Below, piece by piece: positions 154 to 61,721 of a stretch of 64,000 nucleotides of DNA. A program made the translations under genes and the position numbers. Every line of letters begins with the position of its first letter. The stretch's first letter is position 1. The notes beneath the pieces were generated by a model, which saw only the letters and a list, made by a program, of their open reading frames with translations, was not told the origin of the DNA and did no database searches. This DNA comes from Macrostomum lignano (lineage: Eukaryota): assembly GCA_002269645.1 (NCBI GenBank), contig NIVC01003823.1, forward strand, positions 79,559 through 143,558, in the 5' to 3' direction.

Positions 154-1795
154 GGCTTCACAAGCTCGAAATTTTGCATCGCCAAAAAAGTTGGGGTTTG
201 TGAAGCTTCGGTTTGTGAAGTTTGGGGCTTGTGAAGTTTGAGGCTTGTGAAGTTTGGGGTTTGTGAAGTTTGGGGTTTGTGAAGTTTCGGGATTGTGAAG
301 TTTGGGGCTTGTGAAGTTTGAGGCTTGTGAAGTTTGGGGTTTGTGAAGTTTGGGGTTTGTGAAGTTTGGGGTTTGTGAAGTTTGGGGTTTGTGAAGCTTC
401 AGGTTTGTAAAGCTTGGGGCTTGTGAAGTTTGGGGTTTGTGAAGTTTCGGGATTGTGAAGTTTGGGGTTTGTGAAGTTTGGGGTTTGTGAAGTTTGGGGT
501 TTGTGAAGCTTCAGGTTTGTAAAGCTTGGGGCTTGTGAAGTTTGGGGTTTGTGAAGTTTCGGGATTGTGAAGTTTGGGGTTTGTGAAGTTTGGGGTTTGT
601 GAAGTTTGGGGTTTGTGAAGCTTCAGGTTTGTAAAGCTTGGGGCTTGTGAAGTTTGGGGTTTGTGAAGTTTGGGGTTTGTGAAGTTTGGGTTTGTGAAGT
701 TTGGGGTTTGTGAAGTTTGGGGTTTGTGAAGTTTCGGGACAGTGAAGTATGTGGATTGTGAAGTTTCGGGATTGTGAAGTTTGGGGTTTGTGAAGTTTGG
801 GGTTTGTGAAGCTTCAGGTTTGTAAAGCTTGGGGCTTGTGAAGTTTCGGGCTTGTGAAGTTTTATTCTGTGATCTTTGGGTTTGTGAAGTTTCGGGCTTG
901 TGAAGTTTTATTCTGTGGATCTTTGGGTTTGTGAAGTTTCGGGCTTGTGAATTTCGGTTTTTGTGAATTTTTGGGCTTGTGAAGTTTGGATTTGTGAAGT
1001 TTTGGGCCTGTGAAGTTTGAGGCTTGTGAAGTTTGGGGTTTGTGAAGTTTGGGGTTTGTGAAGTTTCGGGATTGTGAAGTTTGGGGCTTGTGAAGTTTGA
1101 GGCTTGTGAAGTTTGGGGTTTGTGAAGTTTGGGGTTTGTGAAGTTTGGGGTTTGTGAAGTTTGGGGTTTGTGAAGCTTCAGGTTTGTAAAGCTTGGGGCT
1201 TGTGAAGTTTGGGGTTTGTGAAGTTTCGGGATTGTGAAGTTTGGGGTTTGTGAAGTTTGGGGTTTGTGAAGTTTGGGGTTTGTGAAGCTTCAGGTTTGTA
1301 AAGCTTGGGGCTTGTGAAGTTTGGGGTTTGTGAAGTTTCGGGATTGTGAAGTTTGGGGTTTGTGAAGTTTGGGGTTTGTGAAGTTTGGGGTTTGTGAAGC
1401 TTCAGGTTTGTAAAGCTTGGGGCTTGTGAAGTTTGGGTTTGTGAAGTTTGGGGTTTGTGAAGTTTGGGGTTTGTGAAGTTTGGGGTTTGTGAAGTTTGGG
1501 GTTTGTGAAGTTTCGGGACAGTGAAGTATGTGGATTGTGAAGTTTCGGGATTGTGAAGTTTGGGGTTTGTGAAGTTTGGGGTTTGTGAAGCTTCAGGTTT
1601 GTAAAGCTTGGGCTTGTGAAGTTTCGGGCTTGTGAAGTTTTATTCTGTGGATCTTTGGGTTTGTGAAGTTTCGGGCTTGTGAAGTTTTATTCTGTGGATC
1701 TTTGGGTTTGTGAAGTTTCGGGCTTGTGAATTTCGGTTTTTGTGAATTTTTGGGCTTGTGAAGTTTGGATTTGTGAAGTTTTGGGCCTGTGAAGC
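154..1795. repeat. ~16-bp tandem satellite (GTTTGTGAAGTTTGGG) with a ~780-bp higher-order duplication
   Basis: Unit is visible directly. The variant order at ~235-1015 recurs at ~1015-1795. One inverted unit (GCTTCACAAGCTCGAAA) lies at ~155-172. Confidence 0.95.
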
Positions 1796-5716: not shown

Positions 5717-8700
5717 TTAAGTAGCCGCGTCGCTTTTGTGCAGCATTCGGAAGTGCCGTAACAAATTGCCGCGCTGGGAGAACCGAATGCCGCACACTTT
5801 GCACAGGTGCGGCCTGGGCTTGTCGGAGTGCAGCAGCATGTGCGTCACTAACGAGGATCGCTGGGTAAAACTAATATTGCAACTTGAGCACACGTGCTTA
5901 GAGTCCTCCCTACTGTTGTGCGACTCCTCGTGACGGCGGAGGTGCGACTGACAGGTGAACTCGCGATCACAGGCGTAGCACTTGTGCAAACCCTGCAGCT
6001 TACTTGGCCGCTTGGCTGCCGACGAGGGTGCTGAGGCGATGGAATCGACCGTGCCGGCCGCCTCGCAAGTGTGGGAAGCGTAAGCTAGCAAACTATTGAA
6101 GAACTGCAAGCACTGGTCGCAGCGGTAGCTTCGCTTGTAGCTGCTGCTGATGACGGCGGCGGAGGCGGCTGCAGACGACGACCCGGCGGTGCCCGATGTC
6201 GGCGGAGCGTCGGGCAGGCGTCGATAATTCCGACCGCCAGTACGCTGGATGGCGGAACCGTTTGACGCCGACGATGAAGATGCTAGCAAAGTTGTCTGCG
6301 GCGGTGGCGGCGGAGGACCGGGCTCGCCGCTGAGCTCCTTCAGGAGTGACTCGCTGGCAGCCTGACCAGCCAAGTCGGAACCGTCAAACTGCTGTCCGGC
6401 TGTGCAGCTGTCCGGTTGCTGCTGCTGCTGCTGTTCAGCTATGACAACCATCTTGTCGACGGCGTCGATGTCGATTTCTAACGCCGGGTCGACAACAGCC
6501 GATGTGCTGGAGGCCGCAACGGCCGCAGTCGGAACAGTCGATGCCGAAGCATTAGAGGCAGAAGCAGCGGCGGTTGCAGCGGCGGTGGCGGCAACAGCTG
6601 ACACGGAGCTGACAGTTGAAGGTGCCGACGTAGTCTGGAAACCGTAGCCTTGCAGCAGAAGCGACAGGTCGCTGTGATCGGACTCAGCTAGGAGCAGAGT
6701 GGGGCCCCCGACTGACCCGGCCGTACCGGAGCTCACGATGTCGCCGGAGGCGGTGAGCATGTCGGTGTTGCTTATAACGTATAACACATTGCCAGAATCT
6801 ACACTAAGAACCAATTGCTGCTGTTGTTGTTGTTGCTGTTGCTGAGACTGTTGATGGAATTGCTGCTGCTGAAGGATCAACTCCTGCTGCTGCTGCTGTT
6901 GTTGCTGCTGTTGTTGCTGCTGCTTCTTCTGCAACTGGCGCTGCCTGTACCGCTGCCGCCTTCGCTGCTGCTGCAGAAGATCCCTCTGCGGTGGCTGCCT
7001 CTGCCGCCGATTCGGCTGTCGAGACCCCGTTGCCGCTGTTGCCGATGACGCCGACGCTGAGCCCGTCGCCGTCTCGACTTCCGACGTAGACGGCGCGGGC
7101 CCGGATGGGGCGGCTTCCTCAGCAACTGCGGACAGCTGCTGCCGTTGCCGATTACCGTCCGCACCAACAGGAATGGGCCGAACCCTAGCAGTGGTCGGAT
7201 CCCGTTTAAGCAGCATATTGTGGCTCTTTAAATAGTGCCGCTTTCTACTCGACGAAGAGTGAAAACTGTCCGAGCACAGCTGGCACTGGTAGGGCTTGGC
7301 GTCGGCGTGCAAATTCATATGGGTTCGCAGGCTGCTCTTCGATGAGAAGTAGTTCTTGCATAGATGGCAGGCCAGCAGCTTCACCTGCGAGATTGGAGAG
7401 TTGCCCCCGAAAATTCGGGTATAGCAAAGTTTAATAATGATATAGTGCTTTGGTCTCTATGGTGCTGGCGCCCACTGACACAATTCTCTATTATTGCTAT
7501 TAATTTACTGTTGCTTTAACATCTGTGCCGCGTGGCAGCAAGAGTTACGGGGGGGGGGGTAAAAGGCGATTCCCTAGGGGGAGGGTGTTAAAGGGCGCAT
7601 TCCGATTGGGAGGGGGTTAAAGGGCGATTCCACAGGGGGAGGGGGTCAGAGGGCGATTCCACAGGGGGAGGGGGTCAGAGGGCGATTCCACAGGGGGAGG
7701 GGGTCAGAGGGCGATTCCACAGGGGGAGGGGGTCAGAGGGCGATTCCACAGGGGGAGTGGGGTTAAAGGGCGATTTCCCACGGGGAGGGGTTAAAGGGCG
7801 ATCCCCAGGGGGTGGGGGTGTTAAAGGGCGATTCCCCAGGGGAGGGGGTTAAAGAGCGACTTCCAGGCGGGGATTAAGGGGCGGCTCCCAGACGAGGGTT
7901 AGAGGAATGTGCAGAAGTCTGCAGAATCTTTAGAGGCCCTAAAGAAGCGATGAAAATGCTGGTACACAAAAATTCAATTAACAACTCAAAACCCACCTGT
8001 TGACTGTGCAGCCTGCTCATGTGATACTTCAACGAGCTGCTAGCCGTGAAAGTTTTCTGACAGACGCTACAACTAAACGGCCTGGCCCCGATGTGCACGT
8101 TGCTGTGCCGCACAAGTTCAACCCGTCTGGAAAACTGGGCGTGACAGATGTCGCACTCGAATCCAGCGCCGGCAGTGTCGCTAACGCCGCCCTCCTCGGC
8201 GACACCGACGCGCCGATGATGAGCAGCGGACGAGGCGGAGGCAGCCGCGGCGGTGAAGCCAGCTAGTTCATCATCGGTGTGCCGAGATTTGGCGGCTCTG
8301 ACTAGCATGCGCTGCGAGACGGTCATGTCAGTGGTGAGCGCCGATTGGGCCAGGCTGCGAGTCTCGTCCTCCGGCAGGCGAAGCTGGCAGCGCCGCTCCC
8401 GGACAAAGTCCCGACTGCCCAGCTGGTAGTGGCGCGCCTTGAAGCATTTGTGGGATTGAGATGGAGCTCAAATCTGTGCTATAAATACAAGACCAATACA
8501 AGCTACTTAAGCTCATTCCATATGCGTAACACCATAGTCCAAATCATGATAATGTTGTCCAATCCAAGCCACGCTTAATTACGATTCAAACTATTTCAAT
8601 TCTAATTCTATTTCTAACACGCTTAAATTCTAATCCAAGCCACTCCATTCCGATCTAAGCCACTACATTCCAATCCAAGCCACTCTATTCCAATCCAAGC

Positions 8701-11700
8701 CACTGCATTCCAATCCAAGCCACTGCATTCCAATCTAAGCCACTCCATTCCAATCCAAGCCACTGCATTCCAATCTAAGCCACTCCATTCCAATCCAAGC
8801 CACTGCATTCCAATCGATCTAAGCCACTCCATTCCAATCGATCCAAGCTACTCCATTCCAATCGATCCAAGCCACTCCATTCCAATCGATCTAAGCCACT
8901 CCATTCCAATCGATCCAAGCCACTCCATTCCAATCGATCCAAGCCACTCCATTCCAATCCAAGCCACTGCATTCCAATTGATCCAAGCCACTCCATTTCA
9001 ATCTAATCCACTCCATTTCAATCTAAGCCACGCCATTCCAATCCAAGCCACTCCATTCCAATCCAAGCCACTCCATTCCAATCCAAGCCACTCCATTCCA
9101 ATCTAAGCCACTCCATTCCAATCGATCCAAGCCACTCCATTCCAATCCAAGCCACTCCATTCCAATCCAAGCCACTCCATTTCAATCCAAACCAATTCAT
9201 TCCAATCTAAGCCACTAAATTCCAATCGAAGTCATGAAATTTCAATCTAAGCCACTTTATGCCAGTCAAATCAGCTAAATACTAATCCAAGCCACTGAAT
9301 TTCATTTCCCAACCCAAGCCAATCAAGCAATAACCCCTGGCTCACTTTTTTCAAATCCACAATCAGACTTTCCCGTTCGGAGCGCAGTTCACCAATATGC
9401 AATTGCAAATGCTTAATATTGTGAAAGTCCCGCTCGCAATGGTTGCACCGAAAATGGCGCCTATCATTGTGCCGCATAGTCGTGTGCACAGCCAGTGCGC
9501 TCTGGCTAACGAACTCTTGGCCGCAGTCTCGGCACTGCTTTGGCTGGTCGGGCTGATGAGCCAGCTGGTGATTTTTCAACGCCAGCTCAGATAGGAAGGC
9601 CTTGCCGCACAGTTCGCACGAGTGCCTCTCCTGGTGATGCTCAGTGCGCACGTGCAATTGCAATTGTTTAGCTTTGTAGAAGCTGCGCTGGCATTTAGCG
9701 CAGCCGTAGTAAGCGTCTAGGCTAATCTGCGAAAGGTAAAATTAAGGGAGCAAAGGCCGTCAGTTGAAGCAGTTCTTTAAGACTACTCGAGGTATAGATA
9801 CACTATATATCTGCGCAGGCAGATTCAGGGAGAGAAAGCGGAGAGGCAGATTCAGGGACAGAAAGCGGAGAGGCAGATTCAGGGACAGAAAGCGGAGAGG
9901 CAGATTCAGGGACAGAAAGCGGAGAGGCAGATTCAGGGACAGAAAGCGGAGAGGCAGATTCAGGGACAGAAAGCGGAGAGGCAGATTCAGGGACAGAAAG
10001 CGGAGAGGCAGATTTAGGGAGAGAAAGCGGAGAGGCAGATTCAGGGACAGTAAGCGGAGAGGCAGATTCAGGGAGAGAAAGCGGAGAGGCAGATTCAGGG
10101 ACAGTAAGCGGAGAGGCAGATTCAGGGAGAGAAAGCGGAGAGGCAGATTCAGGGACAGTAAGCGGAGAGGCAGATTCAGGGAGAGAAAGCGGAGAGGCAG
10201 ATTCAGGGACAGTAAGCGGAGAGGCAGATTCAGGGACAGAAAGCGGAGAGGCAGATTCAGGGACAGAAAGCGGAGAGGCAGATTCAGGGACAGAAAGCGG
10301 AGAGGCAGATTCAGGGACAGAAAGCGGAGAGGCAGATTCAGGGACAGTAAGCGGAGAGGCAGATTCAGGGACAGAAAGCGGAGAGGCAGATTCAGGGAGA
10401 GAAAGCGGAGAGGCAGATTCAGGGAGAGAAAGCGGAGAGGCAGATTCAGGGACAGAAAGCGGAGAGGCAGATTCAGGGACAGAAAGCGGAGAGGCAGATT
10501 CAGAGAGAGAAAGCGGAGAGGCAGATTCAGGGAGAGAAAGCGGAGAGGCAGATTCAGGAGAAGAAAGCGGAGAAGCAGATTCAGGGAGAGAAAGCGGAGA
10601 GGCAGATTCAGGGACAGTAAGCGGAGAGGCAGATTCAGGGAGAGAAAGCGGAGAGGCAGATTCAGGAGGAGAAAGCGGAGAGGCAGATTCAGGGACAGAA
10701 AGCGGAGAGGCAGATTCAGAAGGAGAAAGCGGAGAGGCAGATTCAGGGACAGAAAGCGGAGAGGCAGATTCAGGGACAGAAAGCGGAGAGGCAGATTCAG
10801 GGACAGAAAGCGGAGAGGCAGATTCAGGGAGAGAAAGCGGAGAGGCAGATTCAGGGACAGTAAGCGGAGAGGCAGATTCAGGGACAGAAAGCGGAGAGGC
10901 AGATTCAGGGACAGAAAGCGGAGAGGCAGATTCAGGGACAGAAAGCGGAGAGGCAGATTCAGGGACAGAAAGCGGAGAGGCAGATTCAGGGACAGAAAGC
11001 GGAGAGGCAGATTCAGGGAGAGAAAGCGGAGAGGCAGATTCAGGGAGAGAAAGCGGAGAGGCAGATTCAGGGAGAGAAAGCGGAGAGGCAGATTCAGAGA
11101 GAGAAAGCGGAGAGGCAGATTCAGGGACAGTAAGCGGAGAGGCAGATTCAGGGAGAGAAAGCGGAGAGGCAGATTCAGGGACAGTAAGCGGAGAGGCAGA
11201 TTCAGGGAGAGAAAGCGGAGAGGCAGATTCAGGGACAGTAAGCGGAGAGGCAGATTCAGGGAGAGAAAGCGGAGAGGCAGATTCAGGGAGAGAAAGCGGA
11301 GAGGCAGATTCAGGGACAGTAAGCGGAGAGGCAGATTCAGGGACAGAAAGCGGAGAGGCAGATTCAGGGAGAGAGACCACAGACGCAGTTTATGCTCACC
11401 AGATCGTCACTCTTCGGTATAGGATATTGATTAACAGTTGCCGTGCCATCGCTAGCGTACAAAGCCTCAGTCAGCTGAGGAAAATCAGCGGCAGACAGTA
11501 CGCTAGACAGTGGCAAGTTGAGATCCGGTTCAGTAACTGTAGCCGGGTTAGCCGCCCGATTCAATGACAGAGAGTTATGATTATTAGCTGCGATTGCGTT
11601 ATCGCCAGACGGAATTCTTCCGAGGCTAGACGAGCCGGACACAGCAGCGGCAGAGGCGGCAGCAGTGGAGGTAACGGATTGTACCGGCATAGATGACACC

Positions 11701-17700: not shown

Positions 17701-18963
17701 GGAATCGAGCCTGGGTCGCTGGCACACCAGAGCAGCTGCGCTACCGCTGGGCTACGGCCCCCCTAACACAGACAGACACGCTCACACAGGGTGTACAGCG
17801 GCACTGCCTTTCTAGTTGTCAGGCATGTGCACCCTCTGCGCCTTGGGGGGGGGCTGGCCCTCTTGGCTGATTTCCATGCACACAAGCCCAAAAATGAATT
17901 CGGCGAGTTGAAACGAGCGAGTCAGATATGCGTTTAACGCGAAAACCGTTCTGCCTACCTTAGTCTTAGCGGCAGGAAGTTCTTCACTAGGACTAGCACC
18001 GGCCGCCGCCAACTGCTGCTGCTGCTGCTTACGTCTCCGTTTCTTCAGCATTGGGCTGGACAAATCGGGCAGGGCGCCGGCGCTGCCAGACGGAGGCGAC
18101 GCAGACGCCTGGCCATTCAGTGAGCGGAGCTTAGCGCTGCAAACTGAACGGAAATGCAGCAGCAGGTTGAGACGCTGATCGAAGTCTTGAGAGCACACTG
18201 GGCATTGATAGACTTCGTCTGTCCAATGCAGTGAGCAATGCGCCACAAAAGCGGACCGACGCATGATCCGCTTGGAGCAGATCGGACAGACAAATCCGGA
18301 CCTGGCAACTGATTGGTCCTCAGATTCTGCCGGAGAATTCGCATGATTAATAGCCACGTGTAGACGGAGATTCTCCATAGTAGAAAACGCTTCGTCGCAA
18401 TCGGCTACCTCACAGTCGAAGGGTTTACGTAGGGCGTGATCTAACACGTGCGAGGTGAGACTGTAGCAAGACACTAGTACCTGACAGCAGGGACAGTGAG
18501 CGTAGCCTATGGGCGGCGGAGACCTGGCGGCGGCAGGTGAATCAGAGCTCGGCTGTTGCAGCTGTTGATGCTGCTGTAAAGAAGCATTAGCAGGCGCAGA
18601 GGCAGTGGCAGTAGCAGTTGATTGGTCAGCAAAACTGACAATCTGCAAGTAGCCGCTGTTTGCATCTGAAGCAGGTATAGTTATGGTCGATGCCTGCGGC
18701 ACCGCCATTGCTGCGGTATCATCTGTGGACACGGTGAGAGTCTGGTAGACACTACCAGAGCTTGCTGGGGCCTCTGCCCACAGGGCTGAAAGGAGAGCAT
18801 CGCCACTACCAACGGCCGAGTTCAAGTTCACTATTTGAATGTAGCGACCATCAAGTTCGATGCACTGAATAGCATTCTGATTTGATAAAGAGGGGATTTC
18901 AACATTGTCTAAGGCAATATATACTCGCTGCTCTGCATCAGTTGGCTGCTTTAGTTGCTCCAT
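5717..18963 (-). CDS. Large multi-C2H2 zinc-finger protein (~1,950 aa, ~28 fingers); 9 exons: 18963-17959, 17326-16898, 16378-15894, 15169-15007, 13167-12607, 12113-11400, 9726-9346, 8437-7997, 7384-5717
   Basis: CxxC...HxxxH arrays with TGEKPY-like linkers. Exons join in frame through GT-AG sites and several fingers are completed across junctions (DLAR|HMRRH, SLK|VHLRRH). The donor at 9346 is the least certain boundary. Confidence 0.88.
7556..7872. repeat. G-rich ~30-bp minisatellite (AGGGCGATTCCACAGGGGGAGGGGGTCAG), potential G-quadruplex
   Basis: About 10 tandem units with multiple G>=3 runs, in the last ZNF intron. Confidence 0.9.
8560..9260. repeat. 20/24-bp minisatellite (AATCCAAGCCACTCCATTCC)
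   Basis: Tandem units visible directly in a ZNF intron. Confidence 0.95.
9818..11375. repeat. 27-bp minisatellite (GCGGAGAGGCAGATTCAGGGACAGAAA), ~57 copies
   Basis: Highly homogeneous tandem array filling a ZNF intron. It explains the 552-aa and 525-aa pseudo-ORFs. Confidence 0.97.
12265..12600. repeat. 27-bp minisatellite (CAGATCCATCAGTGGGTATTGCTATGC), ~12 copies
   Basis: Tandem array starting a few nt inside the intron donor at 12606. Confidence 0.95.
13210..13400 (+). mobile_element. SINE family B (partial)
   Basis: GGGCCGTAGCCCAGTGGTCCAGCG head and CTCTGCTCGTGCAATTAAC...GTGTACATGCCTAAC...GGGCCGCTGTACAC body, shared with copies at 17.5, 37.7, 42.9 and 57 kb. Confidence 0.85.
13529..13716 (-). 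ncRNA. Putative intronic box H/ACA snoRNA, copy 1
   Basis: On the minus strand: hairpin (UCUCCUUA/UAAGGAGA), H box AUAUAA, hairpin with CUUACGG/UAACCAAC internal loop, and ACA 15 nt after the upper stem. Same strand as the host gene. Confidence 0.75.
13795..13990 (-). ncRNA. Putative intronic box H/ACA snoRNA, copy 2
   Basis: Same architecture. Stems UCUCCUUAA/UUAAGGAGA and UGAUCAG/CUGAUCA, H box AGAUAA, ACA at 13800-13798. Confidence 0.78.
14054..14257 (-). ncRNA. Putative intronic box H/ACA snoRNA, copy 3
   Basis: Same architecture with compensatory stems UCUCCGUU/AACGGAGA and GGUCAG/CUGACC, H box AGAAAA, ACA at 14059-14057. Confidence 0.78.
14520..14930. repeat. 28-bp minisatellite (GGGATTCCCCTGGAGTGAATTCCTGACT)
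   Basis: Tandem units that degenerate toward the right end. Confidence 0.92.
15295..15805. repeat. 36-bp minisatellite (GGATGGAAACCACAAAAATCCCGATTATTTCAATTC), ~14 copies
   Basis: Tandem array in a ZNF intron. Source of the DGNHKNPDYFNS pseudo-ORF. Confidence 0.95.
16672..16850 (+). mobile_element. tRNA-derived SINE family A
   Basis: TAGCCTAGTGGTTAGAGCG...GGTTCGATTCCC...GTGTCCTTGAGCAAGACAC. Confidence 0.85.
17400..17760 (-). mobile_element. SINE family B, near full length
   Basis: Reverse complement of the 42791-43152 copy, including the GTCGCTTAAAGTGCGCCAGGG...CTAATAA tail. Confidence 0.88.
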
Positions 18964-23489: not shown

Positions 23490-27420
<3,931 letters not shown>

Positions 27421-29131: not shown

Positions 29132-32100
29132 TAGGGGTAGGACGTGATCACGATCGTGATCACGATATCGTGAATTCACGACCTTTTTCAGTGTCGTGAA
29201 TTCACGAGTCGTGAAACATTTTTCACGTGCGTGATCGTGATTGTGGGTTTCTTTCAGCTTCAGATGTTACTATGTTTATACTTTTCAGTTCCCCAAACCA
29301 CAATCGTGTACAGTCCTAAATGTAGACTTACTTGGTTTTTGTTTTTCTTTTCAAATACAACGAATGTGTTTTAACACAAAACTTACAGAATAGAGTTTTC
29401 AGTTTACTTTACTTAGTTCAGAAAGTTCGAAGTTAAAGTGGATTTTCGAAGTTCAAAGCTTACTGCCTTATTCTTTTCAATCTTTTGTTTATTTTGTAAA
29501 ATGTAAAATTAAAACTGAAAAGCACTGAATGAAAATATAAATTGTATATATGTATGACTGTATATAAATTTCACTACATGATAGTACATGACATGTACAG
29601 ACAAGTGTTTGTTAACTTGCTTAGCTGCCTACAGAACTGAAAACAGTGAAAAGTGAAAAACAGAAAAGCTTATCAGTGTATGAATATGAAGTATAAAAGA
29701 GTACATGTAGGTTTACTACTTTACTTTTACGTTCTACACATATAGTGTTATTACAATGACTAATTTAAGTCTAATCTATACTATACTAGCTACATGCAAA
29801 AAATCATACTACAGAGTCTACAGACTACAGAGTACACAGCTACACACTATAGCAACAGTTATCTATTCCTTATCGATAAACTTTTTCTTGTAGCTCCAAC
29901 TCTACTTGTTCTATAGTCTTTGATTATTTATTTTCTCTATCATTATCTTGTCTCTCTGATCTCAATCTTCAAAAAAGTAAAACTAATCACTAATCAGCAA
30001 TAACAGCAATGAATTGAATGGACCCTGCTCATTTCTCTATGGGTCAAACTTCCGAACATTATAGTTAATAAAAACAAGCTTTTCAACGGTTTCGCCAAGC
30101 AGGCGACGTCGTTTCGGCTCGTAGATGTTTCCAACGTTGCTGAAGATACGCTCACTTGGAACACTGGTAGGTGGTGGTCCCAGAAATTTCCGAACAAGTG
30201 CTGACATTGCAGTTGATGGAGTCTTGTCTCTCCAGAACTTCATTGGGTCTTCCTCAAATGGAAGTCGAGGCTCTGATAGGTAGGCTGCCATTTCACGAGC
30301 CAACTTGTCCATAGCATTGCCTCTGTTTGAAACTGGCAGTAGCGTTCCGGCCCTAGACAGGTCACGCAGAGTTGCAGCTGCAGCACTAGAAGTAGAAGAC
30401 TTCTCGAACAGGGCTGACATAGATAGCTGCTGAGGCTGAGACTCAGTTTGTCTAAAAAGGTGAAATTAAAAGTTAAAAGTTAAAACAAAGAGAACTTTGA
30501 TATATTAGTTATAAAATTTATAACTTACAGATGTAGCAAATGTAATTTATAATTTAATTTTTTTGTTACATGTACATGTACATTGAATTATGAAATAGAG
30601 GAAATACTCACGGCTCAGTTTCGATAGATACATCGGAGAGGTCCTCGTCTATGGCTGTATCGCCATCAACAGTAGGAAGAGAAGTTTCACGCAAAATTTC
30701 ATTCATTGCTTTTACGAGCTCAGCCTTAGCAAAGTTGCGCTGCTCTTCATCGAAAAAATCTAGCCGGAAGCGTGGGTCTAACATCGTAGCAACAATGTGG
30801 TGGTGACTCTTTTTTTCGTCAGAGAAGCGTTGAGTCAACCCTTTCACCAGGTCGTCTCGAAGGTACGTGATGCCAAAGCAGTCTACCTGCTGCAGATGCT
30901 CCAGCGACACTTTCACCATCGGCAAGATACACGAGATGCTGGCAGTTTCCCTGCTGACTTCTAGCGTAAAAACCTCAAAAATCTCAAGAAGTTTGACAGC
31001 TTTCTTTGAAACATCTGACTCATTGTCCGTCAGGATTTCAATTGGTCGGTGTCTGGTGCGATAGACACTAAACGCTTCCTCTTGCTCGTTGATTCGGCGT
31101 AACATGGCTAGTGTTGAATTCCAGCGTGTGTCTACATCTTGCACGAGGCTGTGTGTTGGTAGCTTCAGCTGGAGCTGCAGTGTTTTGAGGTTTGCTTGAG
31201 CGGTTACAGAGTGGTGGAAGTGGCCAACAATGCTCCGTGCTTTGTCAAGTATTGTCTTCAGTCCTCGATGACCGGAGATGGAATCCTTAACAACAAGGTT
31301 CAGCTTGTGGGCAGCACAATGGGCAGATGGTACTTTCAGAAGTTCTCCTGCAAGCTTCATGTTGCTGGCCCCATCACGCAGGAGGAGGCTGACTTGCTCT
31401 AAGCCAATGCCCCACTCACCAAGGGTTGTCGAAAAAACGGCCGAGATGTTAAGCCCAGTATGGGCATCAGTGAATGGCTTTACGCACAGTAAAAGCTGCT
31501 TACGCTCAAAATCTGGCGTGATAGAATGGATTGTGAAGGACATGAGTGCCAACTGGCCGTCACTCCACAAGTCACACGTGAAACCGAAATCTCGCAGTCT
31601 GTCTATTTCGTCCTGGACCTGCAATTTAATTTCTTCATAGAGAGTCTCTAGCTTGTCATGATAAAATCGAGTGCTCTTCAATCGATATTGCGGACATGCT
31701 TCTTTCAACAGATCGCGAAAGCCTTCACCTTCTACCACAGAGAATGGCTGTGAATCCAACACAATAAAGCGGAGAATTTTTCGATCAATTGCAACCGAAC
31801 GAGGGTGCGAATCCGACCATTCTTGAGCATTTGCTTGAGCAAACATTGTGCTCAACTTCTGCTGCTTCAATGGTTGTGGTCCATCTTTACATTTTGGCTT
31901 TGCACGATCTGCCTCAGTGTTTAGGAGCTCTTTGAATTGAATTGGATGGCAGGATTCTATGTGTCTTCGCATGCTGCCTGTTGATCCTGTGTTTCGTAGA
32001 ACCTCCTTCTTACAAGCTAGGCAAGCAGCAGAATTCTCTTTTCCTTCAACGTCTTTAAAGTACAACCACACAGCACTGCCTCTTCCTCGAGGTTGCTGGG

Positions 32101-33345
32101 TTGGCTTATCAACAGAGGCCATTGCAAATGAATGGCTGAAATTGTTTGATTTGTAAATTGTAAATTGTAATGTAATATTGTGTAATTGCCTATTTTAATT
32201 TGCTAGGTAGAAAAGCAAAGAAAAAACAAGTATTATATTATTTTAAATTAAAATATTTATTTATATTTTAAATAAAATATTGCATAGTATAGCAGTATAG
32301 TGTAAATGTAAAGTCACTACAGACTTTAAAGTCAAATAGGCTAGAAAAAAATATTTTTAGACTAACCATATAGATTAGAAATATACTACTATGCATCAGG
32401 CAATCAGGCATACATATTCAATATACCAGTGTACCACATGATAGTACTAGTACATAATAGTTAATACTATATTGAATATTGAATATTATTCATTATTCAA
32501 TTCAATTCAAGAAGAAAAAGTATTTAATATTTGTGTTTGACTATTATTATTACTATTAACAAATGACAATAACAATAGCAAATAACAATTTAATTTAGCA
32601 TATCCATCAAGTATATTTGCTACTTAGTACTTAGACTTAGTCAACCTTAATTTTTAATTTACAGCAATTTATTTTAGTAAAAAAATACTATGCTTATATA
32701 TTAAAAATTATTAGTTATAAATTATAATTACTAAATAACTATTAGACAATCAGATTATAAAATTATGCTCTAGTATCTACTATCTATCTGTATAGTATCT
32801 AATCTATTTATACATTATTATAGCATAAAAATAATAAGAAGAAAGAAAAACTCAAATATGCAAATTCATGATCAAAATGAAATGAAATTTTTGTTTTAAC
32901 TATTTATTTAATACTAAATTCTAAAATAGTAATAGTAGCAAATACTACTTTTAAATTAAAAATTTAAAAATAAAAATACTAAATAGTTACAGCTTTCAGC
33001 TTAGTTTGAGCTTTGAGAAAGCCAAAAAGCAACACAAATGTCTAAGAAGTAAGAACTTCTTACTTCTCAGCCAGACTCTGAGTTCCTTCTCAACCAGAGA
33101 AGAAAGCCAGATGGGCAGATGCAGATGGTATAAGCTGATGGTATAGAAGCACTTAAAAATAGAATCAAACACATTAACTGATAGAAAAATTCAAATTTGA
33201 AGAAAAAAAAACAAAATTTGAACGGAAATTTTTTACTTTTAATTTTTCACGAACCAATCACGATCACGATCACGATCACGGCAAAGCTGAAATTATTCAC
33301 GACTACTCACGCCCGACCCAAAAATTTTTGCTCGTCCGACCTCTA
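29132..33345 (-). mobile_element. Complete hAT (Ac/ZBED-type) DNA transposon, 4,214 bp
   Basis: TIRs TAGGGGTAGGACG and TAGAGGTCGGACG (reverse complement). Perfect 8-bp TSD CTTTATTC at 29124-29131 and 33346-33353. Clustered CACGA/TCGTG subterminal motifs at both ends. Confidence 0.96.
30037..32122 (-). CDS. hAT transposase (~641 aa), 2 exons: 32122-30612 and 30451-30037
   Basis: BED finger (SAVWLYF...CLAC...HIESCH), CDLW, RDGASNM, CAAH, DTRWNST, and dimerisation domain with SERIFS. The phase-2 GT-AG intron joins in frame with no stops. Confidence 0.93.
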
Positions 33346-36107: not shown

Positions 36108-51598
<15,491 letters not shown>

Positions 51599-53405: not shown

Positions 53406-56235
53406 ATGGCTTTGCATGAAATATTTTCACACCCAGAAGTTAGAGTTTATAAATCTACGCTAGTTTCCAAGGCTACATTTTTTCTTATATGTTGCGTAAT
53501 ACTAACATTTGTAGCTCCACTTTTGTCGGTGTATCGAGCATATGGTAAGCGGGTATTTGCAGTTTTTGACTGCATCTCCTGTCTAAAAGTTTTGCTTAGA
53601 AAAGCGCTTAGATTGCAGTGCCACATTTTTTTAATGGTTTTAGACTCTTTTAAGACAGTAACTGATGGTTCAGTTAAGTGCTGTGAAACAGAAATATAAA
53701 ATAAAAAATAGATATAATAAAACATGGAAGTTACAATGGTAGTTTGTTTAATATGTTTGTTATTTGTTTTGCTATTGTTTTCCTTTAAAATTTATATAAC
53801 AAGCCTATATTTACTTAAGGTTTTTAAGGTTTTCGGTTTAGCACCATAGTCTTTGTTCATATTCTCCTTGTCCTTATTGCAAAAATATTTAACAATTAAA
53901 TTTAAAAAATGTAGTCTATTTAAATTCCTAATAAAATTTGAAAGTAAAAAATATGTTTATGCTGGGTTCGATTTTTGGCATATATTTTAAAAAAATAACC
54001 TAAGGATGGGTTTCTTTACAAATTCTATTCAAACATTTATAGAGAAAAATAGCAACTAAACCTTCAAAACAGACTTTGTTTGCCAAGTAGTACTTAAATA
54101 GATCTAAAAGAATATAGTATATAAATTCAAGTATCAAGTGTCAACTATTCGATTCTAATGGAATAAAAAATTGCTTTTGGAATAAAAAATAACAATATAT
54201 GTAATTCAATATATTTTAGTATACTGTTAAAACAAAGAGTTTTGGCGTACTAGTTTACATACTGAAAGTTAACTAGAAGATATATTTTCTTAGAAATTAT
54301 TTGAAAATATGTTACGAGCATAAGCACAAAATCCTAGTACTAATATAATTTAATGGAGGGATTCATTTGGTAATTTCTATTGGTTATTTGCTTGAACTTT
54401 GATTTTATTAAAAAAAATCTAGGATTCTGGAAGAAGGAAGATTTCTACACTGAGCAGCCAGTTGTGCGATTCAAATACCAGGCATTGCTCATCCTCAGCA
54501 CCAGCACCACCCAATGGACATGGAGCACAATGACAAACTTGAACGCTCTGCAGCAGAAAAATCTACTGGCGGTGCAAATGAAGGTCATGGAGTCCGACTC
54601 TAATTTGGATGGAAAATACGAATCATTGTTGGTGCAGATTGAAGCGCCGCTGGCTTCCAGCGAGAACATTCTAGCAGCCAAGCTCATCCTTCTGTTTGAC
54701 TACAAACTCTCGGTGAGTGGGCGGCTTGGGAGTCAGTGCCGAAATCATGCCCTGAGCTGTGGGGAGCAGGTGCTACTTGAAGTGCACAGTCGATACCAGC
54801 TGTTGTGCTGATTTAAAAACAAATTTTTTTCTAGTATTAAAGTAGACGGTATATTTTCCTTGTTATTTTTATTTTAAGTATTTTCCTATACTTCTACTGA
54901 AAGTAGGGTAGTTAGCAGAAGTTAACAATCTAAATATACTAAATCTCTAAGGTTTGTATGCTTGAATGAATGTCCATAATATATACTATTTTAGCTGTCT
55001 GTAAGTACTGCCTTGTACAGGGACAATGCTAGTTAAATAATTGCATTTTTAGATGCATTTAATTTATCAACCGTTTAGTTTTTATGAATCTAGAGCTCGT
55101 ATTCTGCAGCCAGGGGCGTCGCTACCGGGAAGGACGGGGAGACATGTCCCCCCCCCAGTAAGAGCAATGGGGAGACATGACAATGCTTTGTAAAATTCTT
55201 GGCTTTGTCCCCCCCCCAACCATAACATCCATGGCGACTCCCCTGTCTGTAGAAGTTTGGCCTAATGGCCAAAAATACTTCGTATGAAACCAATTGAAAT
55301 TTTTATTGCTCAATTGCAAGGCTTGGACTTTAACATGAACGCTACTGATCTCCCACAGAAACTGTCGGACTTCACAATGCAGAGCATGGCCTACATAGAC
55401 TACTCATCTAGTCAGTCGGGCGCTTCTCTGTCGGCAACTGGACAGCTCAGCTTCAAGCAAAAGACGCCGCTAAAATCATCGGGAATAGATGTTCGTTATA
55501 ATGTGAGTTCGTCAGGGTTTTTATTCGGGCTTTTAAAATTGTAATCAATCTGGTTATGTAAGTTTTATCAATTTTTACTATACCTATTTTTTCTGTTGAA
55601 AGGACTCGGTCATTCCCAGCACCAGTGTCGTCAGTTCAGACTATCAGCTATCGAAAATATTTTTGAATTATCAACAACGAAATGGTAAGACTTTTTATTG
55701 TTTTTTATGTACGCTGTGCAAAGAGGGGTAGAGAATCTGCAGGAAGTGATGTACACTGTGCACAGAGGGGTAGAGAATCTGCAGGAAGTGATGTACACTG
55801 TGCACAGAGGGGTAGAGAATCAACAGGAGGTGGTGTACACTGTGCACAGAGGGGTAGAGAATCTGCATTATTTAAATTATGAAGATGTTAATATACTAGA
55901 AAATAAGGACAAAACTATCATAAACACCAACTCGTTCTAAAAAAACTGCTCACTCAGTGACCACCATGTTCGACAATGCGCTGTACGTGTGGGAGACGGG
56001 CCGGCCAACTGGTGAACCCTTCAGATTGAACGCCACCGTGTATTACCCGCCGGCAAGGGTTCTGTACCTGACGGGTTTCTGGCACCTGATCAAATGGGCC
56101 TGGGTGCAGTATGTGCCCCTGCTGCTGGTGTTCTTGTTCGTGTTCGATCGGATCAAAGTGTTCGTCTTCCAGAACCAGATTATTGGCACCCTTGTTCAAC
56201 GACCGAAGGTGCCGTGCAAGCAGCATGACACTTGA
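53406..56235 (+). CDS. TMEM231: Transmembrane protein 231 (ciliary transition zone, MKS module), 310 aa; exons 53406-53544, 54423-54712, 55359-55502, 55603-55684, 55958-56235
   Basis: MALHEIFSHP...YG|FWKKEDFYTEQPVVRFKYQ and GFWHLIKWAWVQY match the family. All junctions are in phase. Confidence 0.92.
55111..55245. mobile_element. hAT-type MITE
   Basis: TIR CAGGGGCGTCGC / CAGGGGAGTCGC (reverse complement). Degenerate 8-bp TSD TCTGCAGC/TCTGTAGA. Confidence 0.6.
55707..55866. repeat. 42-bp minisatellite, ~4 copies
   Basis: GTACACTGTGCACAGAGGGGTAGAGAATCTGCAGGAAGTGAT units in TMEM231 intron 4. Confidence 0.92.
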
Positions 56236-56677
56236 AGAGAGGCCACGCAAATTTGTAACAAAAAATGATTTTTTACAACCTACAAATCAGGCTAACAGTA
56301 TTGAGATGGTGCGTCGTCTTCTATCGCGTTGTCTAATAAAACTGATTGATTCAAGACTATAGCTTTAAATATGAATTTATATAATCTAATCTATGCCCTG
56401 CAAATCATTGATTAATTATAAATAAATGCTACACACATTAAAATATGACACTGATATTTTTCTTTCGGGCTGGCCCGACAAAGCTTTTACTTGTAAATTA
56501 GACGTCTTTGCTTTCAGCACAATGGGATATTAATAATCTTCAATGCTGATGTAAAAAATTAATCATTCATAGCAGTTGCTGTGGGACCTCCTAGAAGAAA
56601 AAATGTTGCCTAAATACTGAACTTCTTACATTAGACTAGCTGGTGCACTGTCTCAGGTGTATATGATTGCTTTCGAT

Positions 56678-58592: not shown

Positions 58593-60587
58593 ATGGCCAA
58601 CCCTAGCGCGGTTCTCGCTGACATCAGCGACTTCGACAGAGACAAGATGAACCACGTCAAAGTCACGGAGAAATTGGTTCTACCCAACAGTGAGCAGCTC
58701 AAGTCTGAACGAAAAGAGACTCAACTACGCTCCGAAATTGAGCAGGGCCTCCAGCTGAATCATGTCGCCAAGGTGGAGGAGAAAGTCGTCCTGCCAGATG
58801 CCAGCGTCATCGCCCAGGAGAAACAGGAGCACGAGCTGCACGAGGGCATCAAGGGAAGGCCGAAATTAAATCACGTCGACGTAGAGGTGCGGAACAGCCT
58901 GCCGGGTGCGGAGGCGATTGCCCAGGAGAAACAGGAGCACGAGCTGCACGAGGGCATCAAGAGAAGGCCGAAATTAAATCACGTCGACGTAGAGGTGCGG
59001 AACAGCCTGCCGGGTGCGGAGGCGATTGCCCAGGAGAAACAGGTGAGCAACCGCTTAGAGTTCCAGTTCGTGCCAGTTGGTCTAAATTGAGTCATCACGC
59101 GGCTGATGCAAATAAAAAGCAACCGAAAAAGAAGCAGCTTATTCTCTGTCGAATCGCACAATTGGACCGCGTATCACTCCTAGTCGTCTGTTAGAGTAGC
59201 TTGGTAGATGTTTTGGTTGGCAATATAAGATCCCCATCCTTAGGTACATGCATGTAAAGCCTAAATCTAATCCATCATCTCCGCACCGCACGCAGGAGTT
59301 GCAGCTGCGAACTTACTTACTTACTACTGACGGGGGGCGCAGGCGCCGCGAATAGGCCGCGAGGCCCCTATCGCAACCCCAAGGTAAAAGAGCACAAGGA
59401 TTAGCCTTGGGGGTGCGCCCAGTCCCCGCCAGTAGTCGGCAGGTCCGCAGTGGAGGCATCGGCGACCCTCATCCGGCCGGAGTCCCGGACGAAGGCGCGG
59501 AGGTCTCGGATATTGTCCGCGGTGGTCAGCTCGTCCATCCGCTGGGGGTGGCCGAGGTATTTGTGCCGCGCCTTGTTGAAGTAAGGGCAGAAGGTGACGT
59601 GATGCTCCGCGGTCTCCTCTCCTATGCCACAGAAGGGGCAGGTGGGAGGGCAACCGGTTTGCAACGATATATGTCTCTGGAAGAATCCGTGGCCGGTTAG
59701 GACCATGCACATCTCCCTGAGGTCGGTTCTGTTAAGCGAAATCAGATAATCAGAGACTTTCCTGTTCAGGTTAGGCATGGCAGAGCGGCTCTGCCTGTAC
59801 TCGGTGCAGCTGTTCCAGTGGAGCTGGTGCTGCTGATGGAGCCACCTGTTGATATGGCGGGTGACTTGCGACCTGGGAGTGGGTAGCCTCATCAGACGGT
59901 GGTTGCCGTCTGGGTTGCTGCCCTCCTTGGCGAGAGAGTCTGCGAGCTCGTTGCCCAGGATGTTGCTGTGACCAGGTGTCCAGATAATTCTAATCCTGTT
60001 AAGGACTGAGAGAGATTGCACACTGCGGTGGCATTGAGATACTGTAGCAGCGGAGATATTCTCAGTGGTTAAGGCCTTAATAGCAGCTTGGCTATCAGTG
60101 TAGAAATTAATGTCAAAATTATTAATGTTCGCCTGAAACAGTTGCTGGGCACACTGCTCGATGGCGCAAATTTCAGCTTGGAAAACTGAGGTGTTCTCAC
60201 CGAGGTGCAGACTTTCCTGGAGAAGCATCTTACCCTCGTGGAAAATGGCAATACCCGCTCCAGCGCGGCCGTTGAACAGCGAGCCGTCGGTGAAGCAGTG
60301 AATGCCCTGGCTGCGCCGGTTCACACCGACATCCAGCGGAATGTTGTCTCAGCTGACTGTCTCAGTTTACGCAGCTGCGAAGCGAAATTGAGAAAGTACA
60401 CAAGCTGAACCCTGTAGACACGAAGGTGCGCATCAGCATGCCAGACGCTGGAGACATCCTCCAGGAGCGTCGAGAGCAGCAACTGCGCGAGGAGATTACG
60501 AAGGGCGCGCCGCTGCGCCGCGTTGAAACGAAAGTCCGCGACAGTCTGCCCGACGCTGAGACGATCGCGGCCGAGAAGGCGTGCTGA
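58593..60587 (+). CDS. Multi-repeat beta-thymosin/WH2 actin-binding protein (6 repeats); exon 58593-59042, second exon (originally starting 59296) split by a LINE, remainder 60375-60587
   Basis: Repeats of EI..F....L.HV...EK..LP.......EK type. Coding continues after the TSD as [17 protein letters not shown]...AAEKAC*. Confidence 0.88.
59312..60370 (-). mobile_element. 5'-truncated non-LTR retrotransposon with RNase H and C-terminal Cys/His motif (LOA/R1/I-group-like)
   Basis: ORF 60324-59401 with [33 protein letters not shown] and CPFC...ETAEH....CP. (GTAA)n 3' tail. 11-bp TSD GCAGCTGCGAA at 59301-59311 and 60371-60381. Confidence 0.95.
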
Positions 60588-61721
60588 GGCGCTGAAAAGG
60601 GCCTGAGTTGACGTTGGACTTAATCTCGAACCCATTGATAAAATATAGCTACCCATACAGCTTATTCAAGCAATCTTCCTTTCTGGCGTTCAGCATACAA
60701 TGAACCAAATTAGTAGTGAACATATCTATTCCCGGTATCACACACAGAATTAGCATAGCTTAATCCAAATCCTTCCAATCAAGCTAATCTACATTAAATC
60801 AAAAGCGTTTTTGTTGAAAAGACAATAATAAAAATGTACATATATTCAGCTTAGATGCAAAAGTACTCACTAAGTTACTTTTTACTTGCACTTTTTGTTG
60901 TGGTTCTCGACTTAGTACGAGCTACTTTTTCATGAGTGGAGGAAGTCTTAGAATGACTAATTAGTTAACCTAATTAGTAACAAGTATAGGGGTCCAATGG
61001 GTGCATAGGAATAGTCCTGCAGTACCAAGGGCATTATAAACAAAATCATATGCAAATAAAGTGATTTTTTGTGTTAAGCCTCGATGCGAAAGATCTTAAA
61101 ATCTGCTTTGTGTGGAATATGGTTGGTGTTTATACAATAACATTCTTGGTTTTGGGTTATTATAAAACAAGGTTGTAGCTTTTATAATAAAACCTTAATA
61201 GAAAAAGCAGTGCGACTCACCATTTACTCGTGCTTCATTAGACGGTATTGTTTGCGTTAAACTGTGCCTTATAAATAGCAATGAGCATACGAGCGTATAT
61301 AGCCAAGTGTCTTTAGTAAATTGTAGAATAAAATAAGATACTAAATTGACTCCAGTATTTTTATGAAAACAAATTGGATTTGAAAAAAACACAGTAAGTG
61401 GAGCGCAGGCCCTAACCCTAGCGGAGATACGTGGATATGAAGTTTAATTTCAGATATTTGGTCCATTGCTTATTTTTCGAAGGTATGACGTGTCGGAGTT
61501 ATAAAAGAAATTGCTTTTCGGAGAAATGAATTTTCGGGTATCAAACTTCGGAGATATGCATTCGGAGAAAATTGGATTAAAGTGACCTGGAACTAAAGCG
61601 GCTTTGAATGAAATAACTCATGGTCTCTGCGCTCTTAGATATGCAGTTGCAAGCATCAGCGGCTGCTATTGGCAGTAGTTAAGTTTTTAATAGAAAAATA
61701 ATAAAATGCAACAAAAGGCGC

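What the first reader, a model, noticed from the sequence alone, without database searches (positions are those of the whole stretch)
59296..60587. LINE inserted inside a beta-thymosin coding exon carries its own in-frame 3' splice sites (possible intron in the making)
Seen: an 11-bp TSD (GCAGCTGCGAA) duplicates coding sequence, so the antisense LINE split the exon after E-L-Q-L-R. Using the old acceptor (59295) reads into the LINE and stops after 19 codons. The LINE 5' junction has a canonical branch motif CTGAC (A at 60356) and two AGs. AG at 60365 gives Q|[10 protein letters not shown], exactly restoring the original length (ELQ to FTQ). AG at 60374, inside the TSD, gives Q|LRSEIEK (-3 aa). 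Both are in frame with the phase-0 donor at 59043. The junction also has a short duplication (TGTCTCAG twice), which contains the first new AG and brackets the branch motif. Inference: the insertion may be neutralised by being absorbed into the upstream intron, while creating an alternative truncated/NMD isoform.
Basis: partly seen in the sequence, partly recalled or inferred. Interest (0 to 1): 0.82.

Follow-up and report, generated by a model that had tools for sequence, protein, structure and literature searches.

The report
LINE fragment inside a flatworm thymosin exon
A young, 5'-truncated LINE retrotransposon really does sit inside the last coding exon of a six-repeat beta-thymosin gene of the flatworm Macrostomum lignano. 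It most likely just truncates one redundant gene copy, and the idea that splicing rescues it is allowed by the sequence but has no evidence behind it.

Summary
A 1059-bp antisense LINE 3' fragment (59312-60370) is flanked by a perfect 11-bp target-site duplication. It splits exon 2 of a beta-thymosin repeat gene 16 nt after its acceptor, and removing it restores [10 protein letters not shown] and the 36-residue repeat period. LINE relatives 92-99% identical are all from Macrostomum lignano, a repeat-rich neopolyploid with three near-identical subgenomes.

The two in-frame AGs exist, but the LINE does not "carry" either one:
- AG 60374 is the duplicated host CAG codon inside the target-site duplication.
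- AG 60365 lies in about 20 nt of junction filler, which 13 of 15 family proteins show is not family sequence.

The CTGAC branch A is only 9 nt from AG 60365. None of five homology-mapped acceptors in this window has such a motif. The old acceptor is fully intact.

No transcript or empty-site data could be reached. The most likely outcome is default splicing to the old acceptor. That gives a four-repeat protein with a 14-residue LINE-antisense tail, tolerated through gene redundancy. Rescue by a shifted 3' splice site stays possible (about 15%). This is an ordinary kind of event, so interest is low to moderate.

The parts
58593..59042 (+). Beta-thymosin gene, exon 1 coding sequence (ATG at 58593; four thymosin repeats; ends in phase 0)
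   Evidence: Pfam PF01290 Thymosin, E 9.4e-25.
58827..59042 (+). Two tandem 108-bp copies, each encoding one 36-residue thymosin repeat. They differ at one base (58854) and the second copy ends exactly at the donor.
   Evidence: Tandem Repeats Finder reports period 108, 2.1 copies, 99% matches. One difference counted.
59043..59295 (+). Inferred intron 1 (253 nt, GTGAGC...CGCAG). It has a CTAAT branch-like motif (A at 59270), an in-frame stop at 59088-90 if left unspliced, and AATAAA at 59111.
   Evidence: The gene model is inferred from reading frame and repeat period; there is no RNA evidence.
59296..59311 (+). The 16-nt stub of exon 2 left upstream of the insertion (GAGTTGCAGCTGCGAA, encoding ELQLR). 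Target-site duplication copy 1 is 59301-59311.
59353..59355 (+). Premature TAG stop reached when the old acceptor is used (after ELQLR plus the 14 LINE-antisense residues [14 protein letters not shown])
59312..59324 (-). LINE 3' tail, (GTAA)n on the LINE strand (CTTACTTACTTAC on the + strand)
   Evidence: Family proteins that read through the 3' UTR align down to 59325.
59325..59403 (-). LINE 3' untranslated region plus the stop codon of ORF2
   Evidence: P0005 residues 484-512 align to 59411-59325.
59404..60348 (-). LINE ORF2 C-terminal 315 codons, open throughout. RNase H domain at 59917-60303; CCHC motif [18 protein letters not shown] at 59587-59640.
   Evidence: Pfam PF00075, E 6.5e-14. 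92-99% identity to Macrostomum lignano LINE gene models. Coordinates.
60349..60370 (.). 5' junction filler that is not family consensus. It holds the CTGAC motif (60353-57), the out-of-frame AG at 60351-52 and the in-frame AG at 60364-65. It also holds the second TGTCTCAG copy (60358-65), which duplicates the LINE's truncated end (60345-52).
   Evidence: 13 of 15 family proteins read RGF[K/Q]TAIPGR where the window reads *TETVS*. The filler is unique in the window.
60371..60381 (+). Target-site duplication copy 2 (GCAGCTGCGAA), holding the in-frame AG at 60373-74. This is the duplicated host CAG (Gln) codon.
60382..60587 (+). Remainder of the exon 2 coding sequence (SEIEK...AEKAC, thymosin repeats 5 and 6, TGA at 60585-87)
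60793..60832 (+). Likely polyadenylation signals of the gene (ATTAAA at 60793, AATAAA at 60827). There are none on the + strand inside the insert.

Best explanation
This is a recent, dead-on-arrival insertion of a 5'-truncated LINE with an RNase H domain and a (GTAA)n tail. It was made by target-primed reverse transcription (TPRT), in antisense orientation, 16 nt into the last coding exon of a six-repeat beta-thymosin gene. The host is Macrostomum lignano or a very close relative.

What the sequence shows directly:
- the element and its complete 3' end;
- the 11-bp target-site duplication;
- the 5' truncation with about 20 nt of filler, including an 8-nt duplication of the truncated end;
- exact restoration of the exon when the insert is removed.

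What I infer:
- The intact original acceptor at 59295 remains the site used.
- The mRNA therefore encodes repeats 1-4, then ELQLR, then 14 LINE-antisense residues, followed by a 3' UTR about 1.2 kb longer than before.
- The allele persists for three reasons. M. lignano carries three roughly 98%-identical subgenome copies of most loci. The protein is modular. A short four-repeat product may exist anyway.
- The in-frame AGs are by-products of how the junction formed, not an adaptation.
For: - The duplication, the insert limits and the restored reading frame are confirmed.
- The insert has an RNase H domain in an open frame. It is 92-99% identical to M. lignano LINE gene models, so it is young.
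- Family sequence stops at the D codon at 60346-48. 13 of 15 relatives read TAIPGR where the window reads TETVS*.
- The old acceptor keeps CAG|G, a pyrimidine fraction of 0.63 and a CTAAT branch motif at -25.
- The branch A at 60356 is 9 nt from AG 60365, and an out-of-frame AG at 60352 shares the same context.
- None of five homology-mapped NCX acceptors has a CTRAY motif within 45 nt, so that motif is weak evidence in this genome.
- The DV1 line has three paralogous subgenomes with about 98% small-scale identity. They differ mainly by indels, and the genome is about 75% repeats (PMC10733133).
- A related 3-repeat homolog (L001) ends where exon 1 ends, so repeat number varies between relatives.
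- Left unspliced, exon 1 runs to a stop at 59088 followed by AATAAA at 59111.
Against: - No RNA data could be reached, so use of the old acceptor is assumed rather than shown.
- The candidate acceptors have pyrimidine fractions of 0.63-0.68, inside the range of real acceptors in this window (0.58-0.79).
- Introns of 139 nt to 4.9 kb occur in the neighbouring gene, so a 1.3-kb intron is acceptable.
- Two in-frame AGs each preceded by CTRAY occur at only 0.6% of random positions.
- The downstream part of exon 2 is still an intact reading frame. In so young an insertion this says nothing either way.
- I did not find the paralogous copies of this locus. Redundancy is taken from the literature.
Confidence: 0.6

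Rival explanations
1. A useful share of transcripts skips the old acceptor and splices donor 59042 to AG 60374 or AG 60365. The LINE is thereby absorbed into a 1.3-kb intron, giving a six-repeat protein that is either 3 residues shorter or carries ELQ changed to FTQ.
For: - Both AGs are in frame and preceded by CTGAC.
- Their pyrimidine content matches real acceptors.
- The resulting intron length is within the local range.
- The motif combination is rare by chance, at 0.6% of random positions.
- AG dinucleotides supplied by target-site duplications are a documented source of 3' splice sites in transposon-derived introns (PMC11282704).
Against: - The old acceptor, with its own branch motif and pyrimidine tract, is untouched and lies 1.07 kb closer to the donor.
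- AG 60365 is only 9 nt from the proposed branch A. From my own knowledge of mammalian 3' splice-site selection, AGs that close are usually bypassed. That would favour the product 3 residues shorter, not the length-restoring one.
- The out-of-frame AG at 60352 would be met first from any branch point further upstream.
- CTRAY is absent from 5 of 5 mapped acceptors.
- There is no transcript evidence.
Confidence: 0.15
2. The main product of the gene is a short four-repeat form that ends in the 'intron'. It stops at 59088-90 and is polyadenylated after AATAAA at 59111. Exon 2 is then an optional or recently recruited extension, so the insertion hardly affects the gene.
For: - A stop and AATAAA lie just past the donor.
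- The homolog L001 ends five codons after the position matching the end of exon 1. It has ATTAAA right after its stop and no GT donor there.
Against: - The donor CAG|GTGAGC and the acceptor are good.
- The 36-residue repeat period is kept exactly across the 59042 to 59296 junction, and exon 2 encodes two well-formed thymosin repeats. This argues for a real spliced six-repeat form.
- L001 is only 59% identical and may be a paralog.
Confidence: 0.15
3. The insert is an assembly artefact: a repeat wrongly joined into the thymosin locus.
For: Published M. lignano assemblies are repeat-rich, and 36% of Mlig_3_7 by length is reported to lie in chimeric scaffolds (PMC10733133). A 1-nt frameshift relative to a 96-100% identical protein is seen in the neighbouring NCX gene.
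Against: - A perfect 11-bp duplication of coding sequence lies exactly at both ends of the insert.
- The element has a complete tail and a truncated 5' end.
- Removing it restores the exon precisely.
- These are the signature of retrotransposition, not of a misjoin.
Confidence: 0.03

Closest known systems
Exonic insertions of 5'-truncated LINEs made by target-primed reverse transcription (for example, disease-causing L1 insertions in human exons; from my own knowledge)
   Same: A complete 3' end with a tail, a 5' truncation, a short target-site duplication of exon sequence, extra nucleotides at the 5' junction, and a disrupted reading frame.
   Different: The element belongs to a different group of LINEs: it encodes RNase H, has a (GTAA)n tail rather than poly(A), and sits in a flatworm. 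The host is a neopolyploid with redundant gene copies. The insertion lies 16 nt from an acceptor in a terminal exon.
Transposon-derived introns (introners), in which the 3' AG is co-opted from the target-site duplication (PMC11282704, PMC9860276)
   Same: A transposable element lies in a coding exon, and an in-frame AG lies inside the target-site duplication where it could end an intron.
   Different: - Introners are mostly short DNA transposons that supply or complete both splice sites and occur as many similar introns.
- Here there is a single 1-kb LINE fragment with no new donor.
- Rescue would need the pre-existing donor to skip the pre-existing acceptor, which amounts to enlarging an old intron rather than gaining a new one.
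- Splicing has not been shown.
Classical leaky alleles in which an exonic transposable element is removed from the pre-mRNA through cryptic splice sites (maize Ds/dSpm alleles; the 412 element in Drosophila vermilion; from my own knowledge, not checked here)
   Same: The general idea that an exonic insertion can be partly neutralised at the RNA level through splice sites in or next to the element.
   Different: Those cases were shown by cDNA analysis. Here only sequence motifs exist.
Multi-repeat beta-thymosin / WH2 proteins (Pfam PF01290; for example Drosophila Ciboulot and C. elegans tetrathymosin, from my own knowledge)
   Same: Tandem units of about 36 residues, each matching the thymosin profile.
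   Different: There are six units here. One arose by a 108-bp tandem duplication with a single base difference. A related species has only three units (L001).

Membership tests
Beta-thymosin repeat protein (Pfam PF01290) | Significant match to the Thymosin profile above Pfam's gathering score | tested here: met
   E 9.4e-25, 86.6 bits against a cut-off of 24.8, three matched stretches.
Beta-thymosin repeat protein (Pfam PF01290) | Tandem units of about 36 residues, each with an L-x-H/P-V type motif, with the period kept across the inferred splice junction | tested here: met
   units of 36, 36, 36, 36 and 34 residues after a 45-residue first unit. The ELQ encoded by exon 2 completes unit 4.
Beta-thymosin repeat protein (Pfam PF01290) | Binds actin monomers | not testable with these tools
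   Needs biochemistry.
Non-LTR retrotransposon (LINE) copy made by target-primed reverse transcription | Coding homology to the ORF2 C-terminus of a repeated element family | tested here: met
   92-99% identity to at least 15 M. lignano gene models that their source names as reverse transcriptase, endonuclease or RNase H proteins. RNase H PF00075.
Non-LTR retrotransposon (LINE) copy made by target-primed reverse transcription | Full-length family members encode an endonuclease and a reverse transcriptase | tested here: inconclusive
   - This copy is 5'-truncated and lacks both domains.
- My Pfam scan of three fragmentary family gene models gave no hits.
- Support comes only from the sources' own names and from the precomputed PF00078 plus PF00075 on a distant hit, P0063.
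Non-LTR retrotransposon (LINE) copy made by target-primed reverse transcription | Complete 3' end with a simple-repeat or A-rich tail abutting the target | tested here: met
   the family 3' UTR aligns down to 59325, then (GTAA)3 runs up to the target-site duplication.
Non-LTR retrotransposon (LINE) copy made by target-primed reverse transcription | Target-site duplication flanking the insert, with the host sequence restored on removal | tested here: met
   11 bp, perfect, only two copies in the window, 0.07 expected.
Transposon-derived intron (introner-like) | Splice signals from the element or its target-site duplication define an intron that removes the element in frame | tested here: inconclusive
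   In-frame AGs and a branch-like motif exist at the 3' side. No new donor exists, the old acceptor is intact, and an out-of-frame AG competes.
Transposon-derived intron (introner-like) | The element is shown to be removed from mature RNA | not testable with these tools
   No M. lignano transcripts or reads were reachable.
Transposon-derived intron (introner-like) | Many similar copies serve as introns in other genes | not tested
   There is no other copy in the window, and the genome was not available.

The most novel reading that the evidence does not exclude
A LINE that landed 16 nt inside an exon is being turned into intron sequence. This would happen by a downstream shift of the 3' splice site, not by creation of a new intron. 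The new acceptor would be the host's own CAG codon, duplicated in the target-site duplication, with a branch point supplied by untemplated 5'-junction filler. That would be a retrotransposon counterpart of the AG co-opted from a target-site duplication in DNA-transposon introners. It would also be a direct snapshot of intron enlargement by exon-proximal insertion.
Probability: 0.12. Interest if true: 0.5.

Novelty: new member of a known kind. Interest (0 to 1): 0.25.

Why it matters
As it stands, this is one more young transposon insertion disrupting one copy of a gene in a genome that is about 75% repeats and effectively triploid to hexaploid. It illustrates how subgenome copies diverge by indels.

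It would matter more if RNA data showed the shifted acceptor in use. It would then be a datable example of a retrotransposon being absorbed into an existing intron through an AG created by its own target-site duplication. That bears on how introns grow and how exonic insertions escape selection. M. lignano has transgenesis, so a minigene test is feasible.

Tried and rejected
1. I looked for transcripts or annotated isoforms of the thymosin gene. A search of the 5.8-billion-protein collection with the reconstructed protein returned only two distant hits. No ELQ, FTQ, 3-residue-shorter or truncated isoform is on record.
2. An exact look-up of the exon-1 ORF was not on record.
3. I first read P0001 as running into an intron, which would have meant a conserved intron position. 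The contig shows a true TGA stop after ...AQEKKALGQE, so I withdrew that.
4. I sought nucleotide copies of the LINE family to resolve the 5' junction base by base. There is no other copy in the window, the M. lignano hits carry no contigs, and the metagenome scan for the LINE 5' end found nothing. I fell back on a protein-level consensus.
5. A metagenome scan for the empty-site junction found nothing.
6. I asked whether the filler is degraded LINE sequence. Its best-case codon similarity to KTAIPGR is 14 of 21, with P about 0.02. AGC TGA could be GGC CGA after two CpG transitions. This stays unresolved. Either way, the AG at 60365 is not in consensus sequence.
7. I looked for a source of the filler elsewhere in the window and found none.
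8. Pfam scans of the family gene models, meant to place the LINE in a clade, gave no hits because the models are fragmentary.
9. I did not build a proper 3' splice-site weight matrix. Only six acceptors could be mapped, so I compared pyrimidine fraction and branch motifs instead.

Full report
**What is in the sequence.** The finding's coordinates are accurate.

- A beta-thymosin repeat gene starts at ATG 58593. Its first exon runs to 59042 and ends in phase 0 at CAG|GTGAGC.
- A 253-nt interval ends at CGCAG| (AG at 59294-95), and the reading frame resumes at 59296 with GAG TTG CAG CTG CGA A.
- At 59312 the sequence switches to CTTACTTACTTAC..., and for 1059 bp (59312-60370) it is not thymosin.
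- The 11-mer GCAGCTGCGAA at 59301-59311 recurs at 60371-60381. These are its only two copies in 64 kb, against 0.07 expected by chance, and 0 of 100 shuffles gave two.
- Deleting the insert and one copy of the 11-mer gives [73 protein letters not shown].
- The reconstructed protein matches Pfam Thymosin (PF01290, E 9.4e-25). It breaks into a 45-residue first unit followed by units of 36, 36, 36, 36 and 34 residues.
- The ELQ supplied by exon 2 completes unit 4. This kept period is my main reason for accepting the 59042 to 59296 splice, for which there is no RNA evidence.

**The insert.** Its minus strand is open for 315 codons (59404-60348).

- It carries an RNase H domain (PF00075, E 6.5e-14; 59917-60303) and a CCHC motif (59587-59640).
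- A 3' UTR follows, then a (GTAA)3 tail that abuts the target-site duplication.
- A protein search gave hits 92-99% identical. All of these are from Macrostomum lignano, and their source names them as reverse transcriptase, endonuclease/exonuclease/phosphatase or RNase H proteins. More distant hits are RNase H proteins linked to reverse transcriptase.
- The neighbouring sodium/calcium exchanger (NCX) gene is 96-100% identical to database protein P0088, whose source is not given.
- So the window comes from M. lignano or a very close relative (taxonomy). The insert is a young, 5'-truncated copy of an RNase H-bearing LINE.
- I could not place the clade more precisely. The family gene models are patchy and gave no Pfam hits.

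**The 5' junction.** I lined up the 15 family proteins that contain the motif D[NS]I[PL]LDVGVN.

- 13 read RGF[K/Q]TAIPGR immediately upstream of it. The other two carry a different gene-model join.
- The window reads FAAA*TETVS* in that frame. tblastn alignments of family proteins stop at 60348.
- So family sequence ends at about 60348. It could end at 60354 if AGC TGA is GGC CGA after two CpG transitions.
- The remaining 16-22 nt up to 60370 are junction filler, and this filler is unique in the window.
- The filler contains a second copy of TGTCTCAG, which is the LINE's truncated end plus AG. It also contains CTGAC and TTTAC.
- Extra and partly duplicated nucleotides at LINE 5' junctions are a known by-product of template jumping and microhomology joining (my own knowledge).
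- A best-case codon comparison of the filler with KTAIPGR gives 14 of 21 matches (P about 0.02). A degraded-LINE origin is therefore not fully excluded. Either way, it is not consensus sequence.

The branch motif and AG 60365 were created at the junction. AG 60374 is the host's CAG (Gln) codon, copied in the target-site duplication. The LINE does not "carry" either one.

**Are the proposed splice sites convincing?** I mapped five introns of the neighbouring NCX gene by homology to P0088. They range from 139 nt to 4.9 kb, so a 1.3-kb intron is unremarkable.

- Pyrimidine fractions at -20 to -3 are 0.58-0.79 for the six inferred real acceptors. They are 0.68 and 0.63 for the candidates at 60365 and 60374. 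On this measure the candidates are acceptable.
- None of the five NCX acceptors has a CTRAY (CT[A/G]A[C/T]) motif within 45 nt. Only the old thymosin acceptor does (CTAAT, A at -25). The "canonical branch motif" therefore carries little weight in this genome.
- The A at 60356 lies 9 nt from AG 60365 and 18 nt from AG 60374. From general knowledge of 3' splice-site choice, an AG that close to the branch point tends to be bypassed. If CTGAC were used, the product 3 residues shorter would be favoured over the length-restoring FTQ form.
It has the same TGTCTCAG context, is out of frame, and would be reached first from any branch point further upstream.
- Most important, the old acceptor with its own branch motif and pyrimidine tract is untouched and lies 1.07 kb closer to the donor.
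- At random window positions, at least one in-frame AG within 20 nt occurs 44% of the time and at least two occur 14% of the time. At least two, each with CTRAY upstream, occur 0.6% of the time. The combination is uncommon but was picked out after the fact.

**Consequences if the old acceptor is used.** The frame reads ELQLR plus [14 protein letters not shown] and stops at 59353-55.

- The stop lies in the terminal exon, because no + strand poly(A) signal occurs before 60793/60827. Exon-junction-dependent NMD would therefore not be expected (my own knowledge). The longer 3' UTR might still destabilise the mRNA.
- The product keeps four of the six repeats.
- A 59%-identical homolog from another sample (L001) has only three repeats. 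It ends five codons after the position matching the end of exon 1.
- Exon 1 has just gained a repeat through a 108-bp tandem duplication with a single base difference. Repeat number is evidently variable.
- Left unspliced, exon 1 runs to a stop at 59088-90 followed by AATAAA at 59111. A short isoform that does not depend on exon 2 is therefore possible.

**Genomic background.** The literature describes the sequenced DV1 line as follows (PMC10733133).

- It carries three paralogous subgenomes (S, L1, L2).
- These are about 98% identical at small scale and differ mainly by indels.
- The genome is about 75% repeats and transposons.

The assembly and annotation paper reports widespread trans-splicing (PMC5730564). 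The insert is at most about 1% diverged from its closest relatives at the protein level, so it probably postdates subgenome divergence. It is then one of those indels, and intact copies probably exist elsewhere. This is an inference; I could not retrieve the paralogs.

**What could not be done.** No M. lignano transcripts, reads or genomic contigs are reachable through these tools. The thymosin protein is absent from the protein collection. Metagenome scans for the LINE 5' end and for the empty-site junction found nothing. The splicing question is therefore open.

**Verdict.** My estimates are:

| Explanation | Probability |
|---|---|
| Ordinary young LINE insertion truncating one redundant copy of a modular gene; the AGs are incidental | about 0.6 |
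| Rescue by a shifted 3' splice site in a meaningful share of transcripts | about 0.15 |
| Short isoform is the main product | about 0.15 |
| Assembly artefact | about 0.03 |

The first three are not mutually exclusive. The closest known systems are exonic LINE insertions generally. For the speculative reading, the closest are transposon-derived introns that co-opt an AG from the target-site duplication (PMC11282704; PMC9860276). This case differs from those in four ways: it is a single LINE fragment, it has no new donor, it would need to bypass an intact acceptor, and splicing has not been demonstrated.

Noticed in passing
window 58827-59042: A 108-bp tandem duplication with one base difference (58854 G/A) adds a whole 36-residue thymosin repeat. 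Its second copy ends exactly at the splice donor. This is a very recent expansion in repeat number.
   Followed up: partly
window 59043-59116; L001 420-440: If the intron is retained, the frame stops at 59088-90, and AATAAA follows at 59111. The 3-repeat homolog L001 ends at the equivalent point, with ATTAAA after its stop and no GT donor. A short isoform may exist, or exon 2 may be a recent addition.
   Followed up: partly
window 59295-59304: The original exon already has a second in-frame AG (59303-04) 9 nt downstream of the acceptor at 59295. Even the uninterrupted gene could therefore make the isoform that lacks ELQ through a tandem acceptor.
   Followed up: no
window 43790-43800: The NCX (sodium/calcium exchanger) gene has a 1-nt frameshift relative to the 96-100% identical protein P0088: CGGTTAACGG where CGGTTTAACGG is expected. 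This is either a homopolymer assembly error or decay of this gene copy.
   Followed up: partly
window 36108-47042: A sodium/calcium exchanger gene has six exon blocks mapped by homology (36108-36710, 41588-42232, about 43717-43957, 45880-45984, about 46125-46303, 46698-47042). Several of its introns are filled with minisatellites (for example 42336-42789, 43153-43683, 45151-45809, 46359-46684).
   Followed up: partly
window 191-1794, 9817-11374, 25953-27311, 47074-47971, 48584-49583, 50476-51329: Long minisatellite and microsatellite arrays occur here, including a 16-mer x101, a 27-mer x58, (GA)n, an 18-mer x56 and (AGAC)n. Some create spurious long ORFs (9764-11422). One creates a false hexapeptide/eIF2B Pfam hit (48542-49567).
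   Followed up: partly
window 30608-32122 (-): A 504-residue ORF carries a BED zinc finger and a Hermes-type transposase DNA-binding domain. It is probably a hAT-family DNA transposon.
   Followed up: no
window 55960-56236 (+): The last exon of a TMEM231 homolog (PF10149, E 5.6e-23) lies here, about 2.3 kb upstream of the thymosin gene. Likely earlier exons lie around 55300-55690.
   Followed up: no
window 5717-7384 (-) and 17812-18963 (-): Long ORFs with C2H2 zinc fingers.
   Followed up: no
window 59326-59331 and 60352-60357: The pentamer CTGAC occurs at both ends of the insert on the + strand: once in the LINE 3' UTR next to the tail and once in the 5' filler. The filler also starts with GTAAA on the LINE strand, which resembles the tail unit. 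Part of the filler may have been copied from a LINE 3' end, but the similarity is too short to judge.
   Followed up: no
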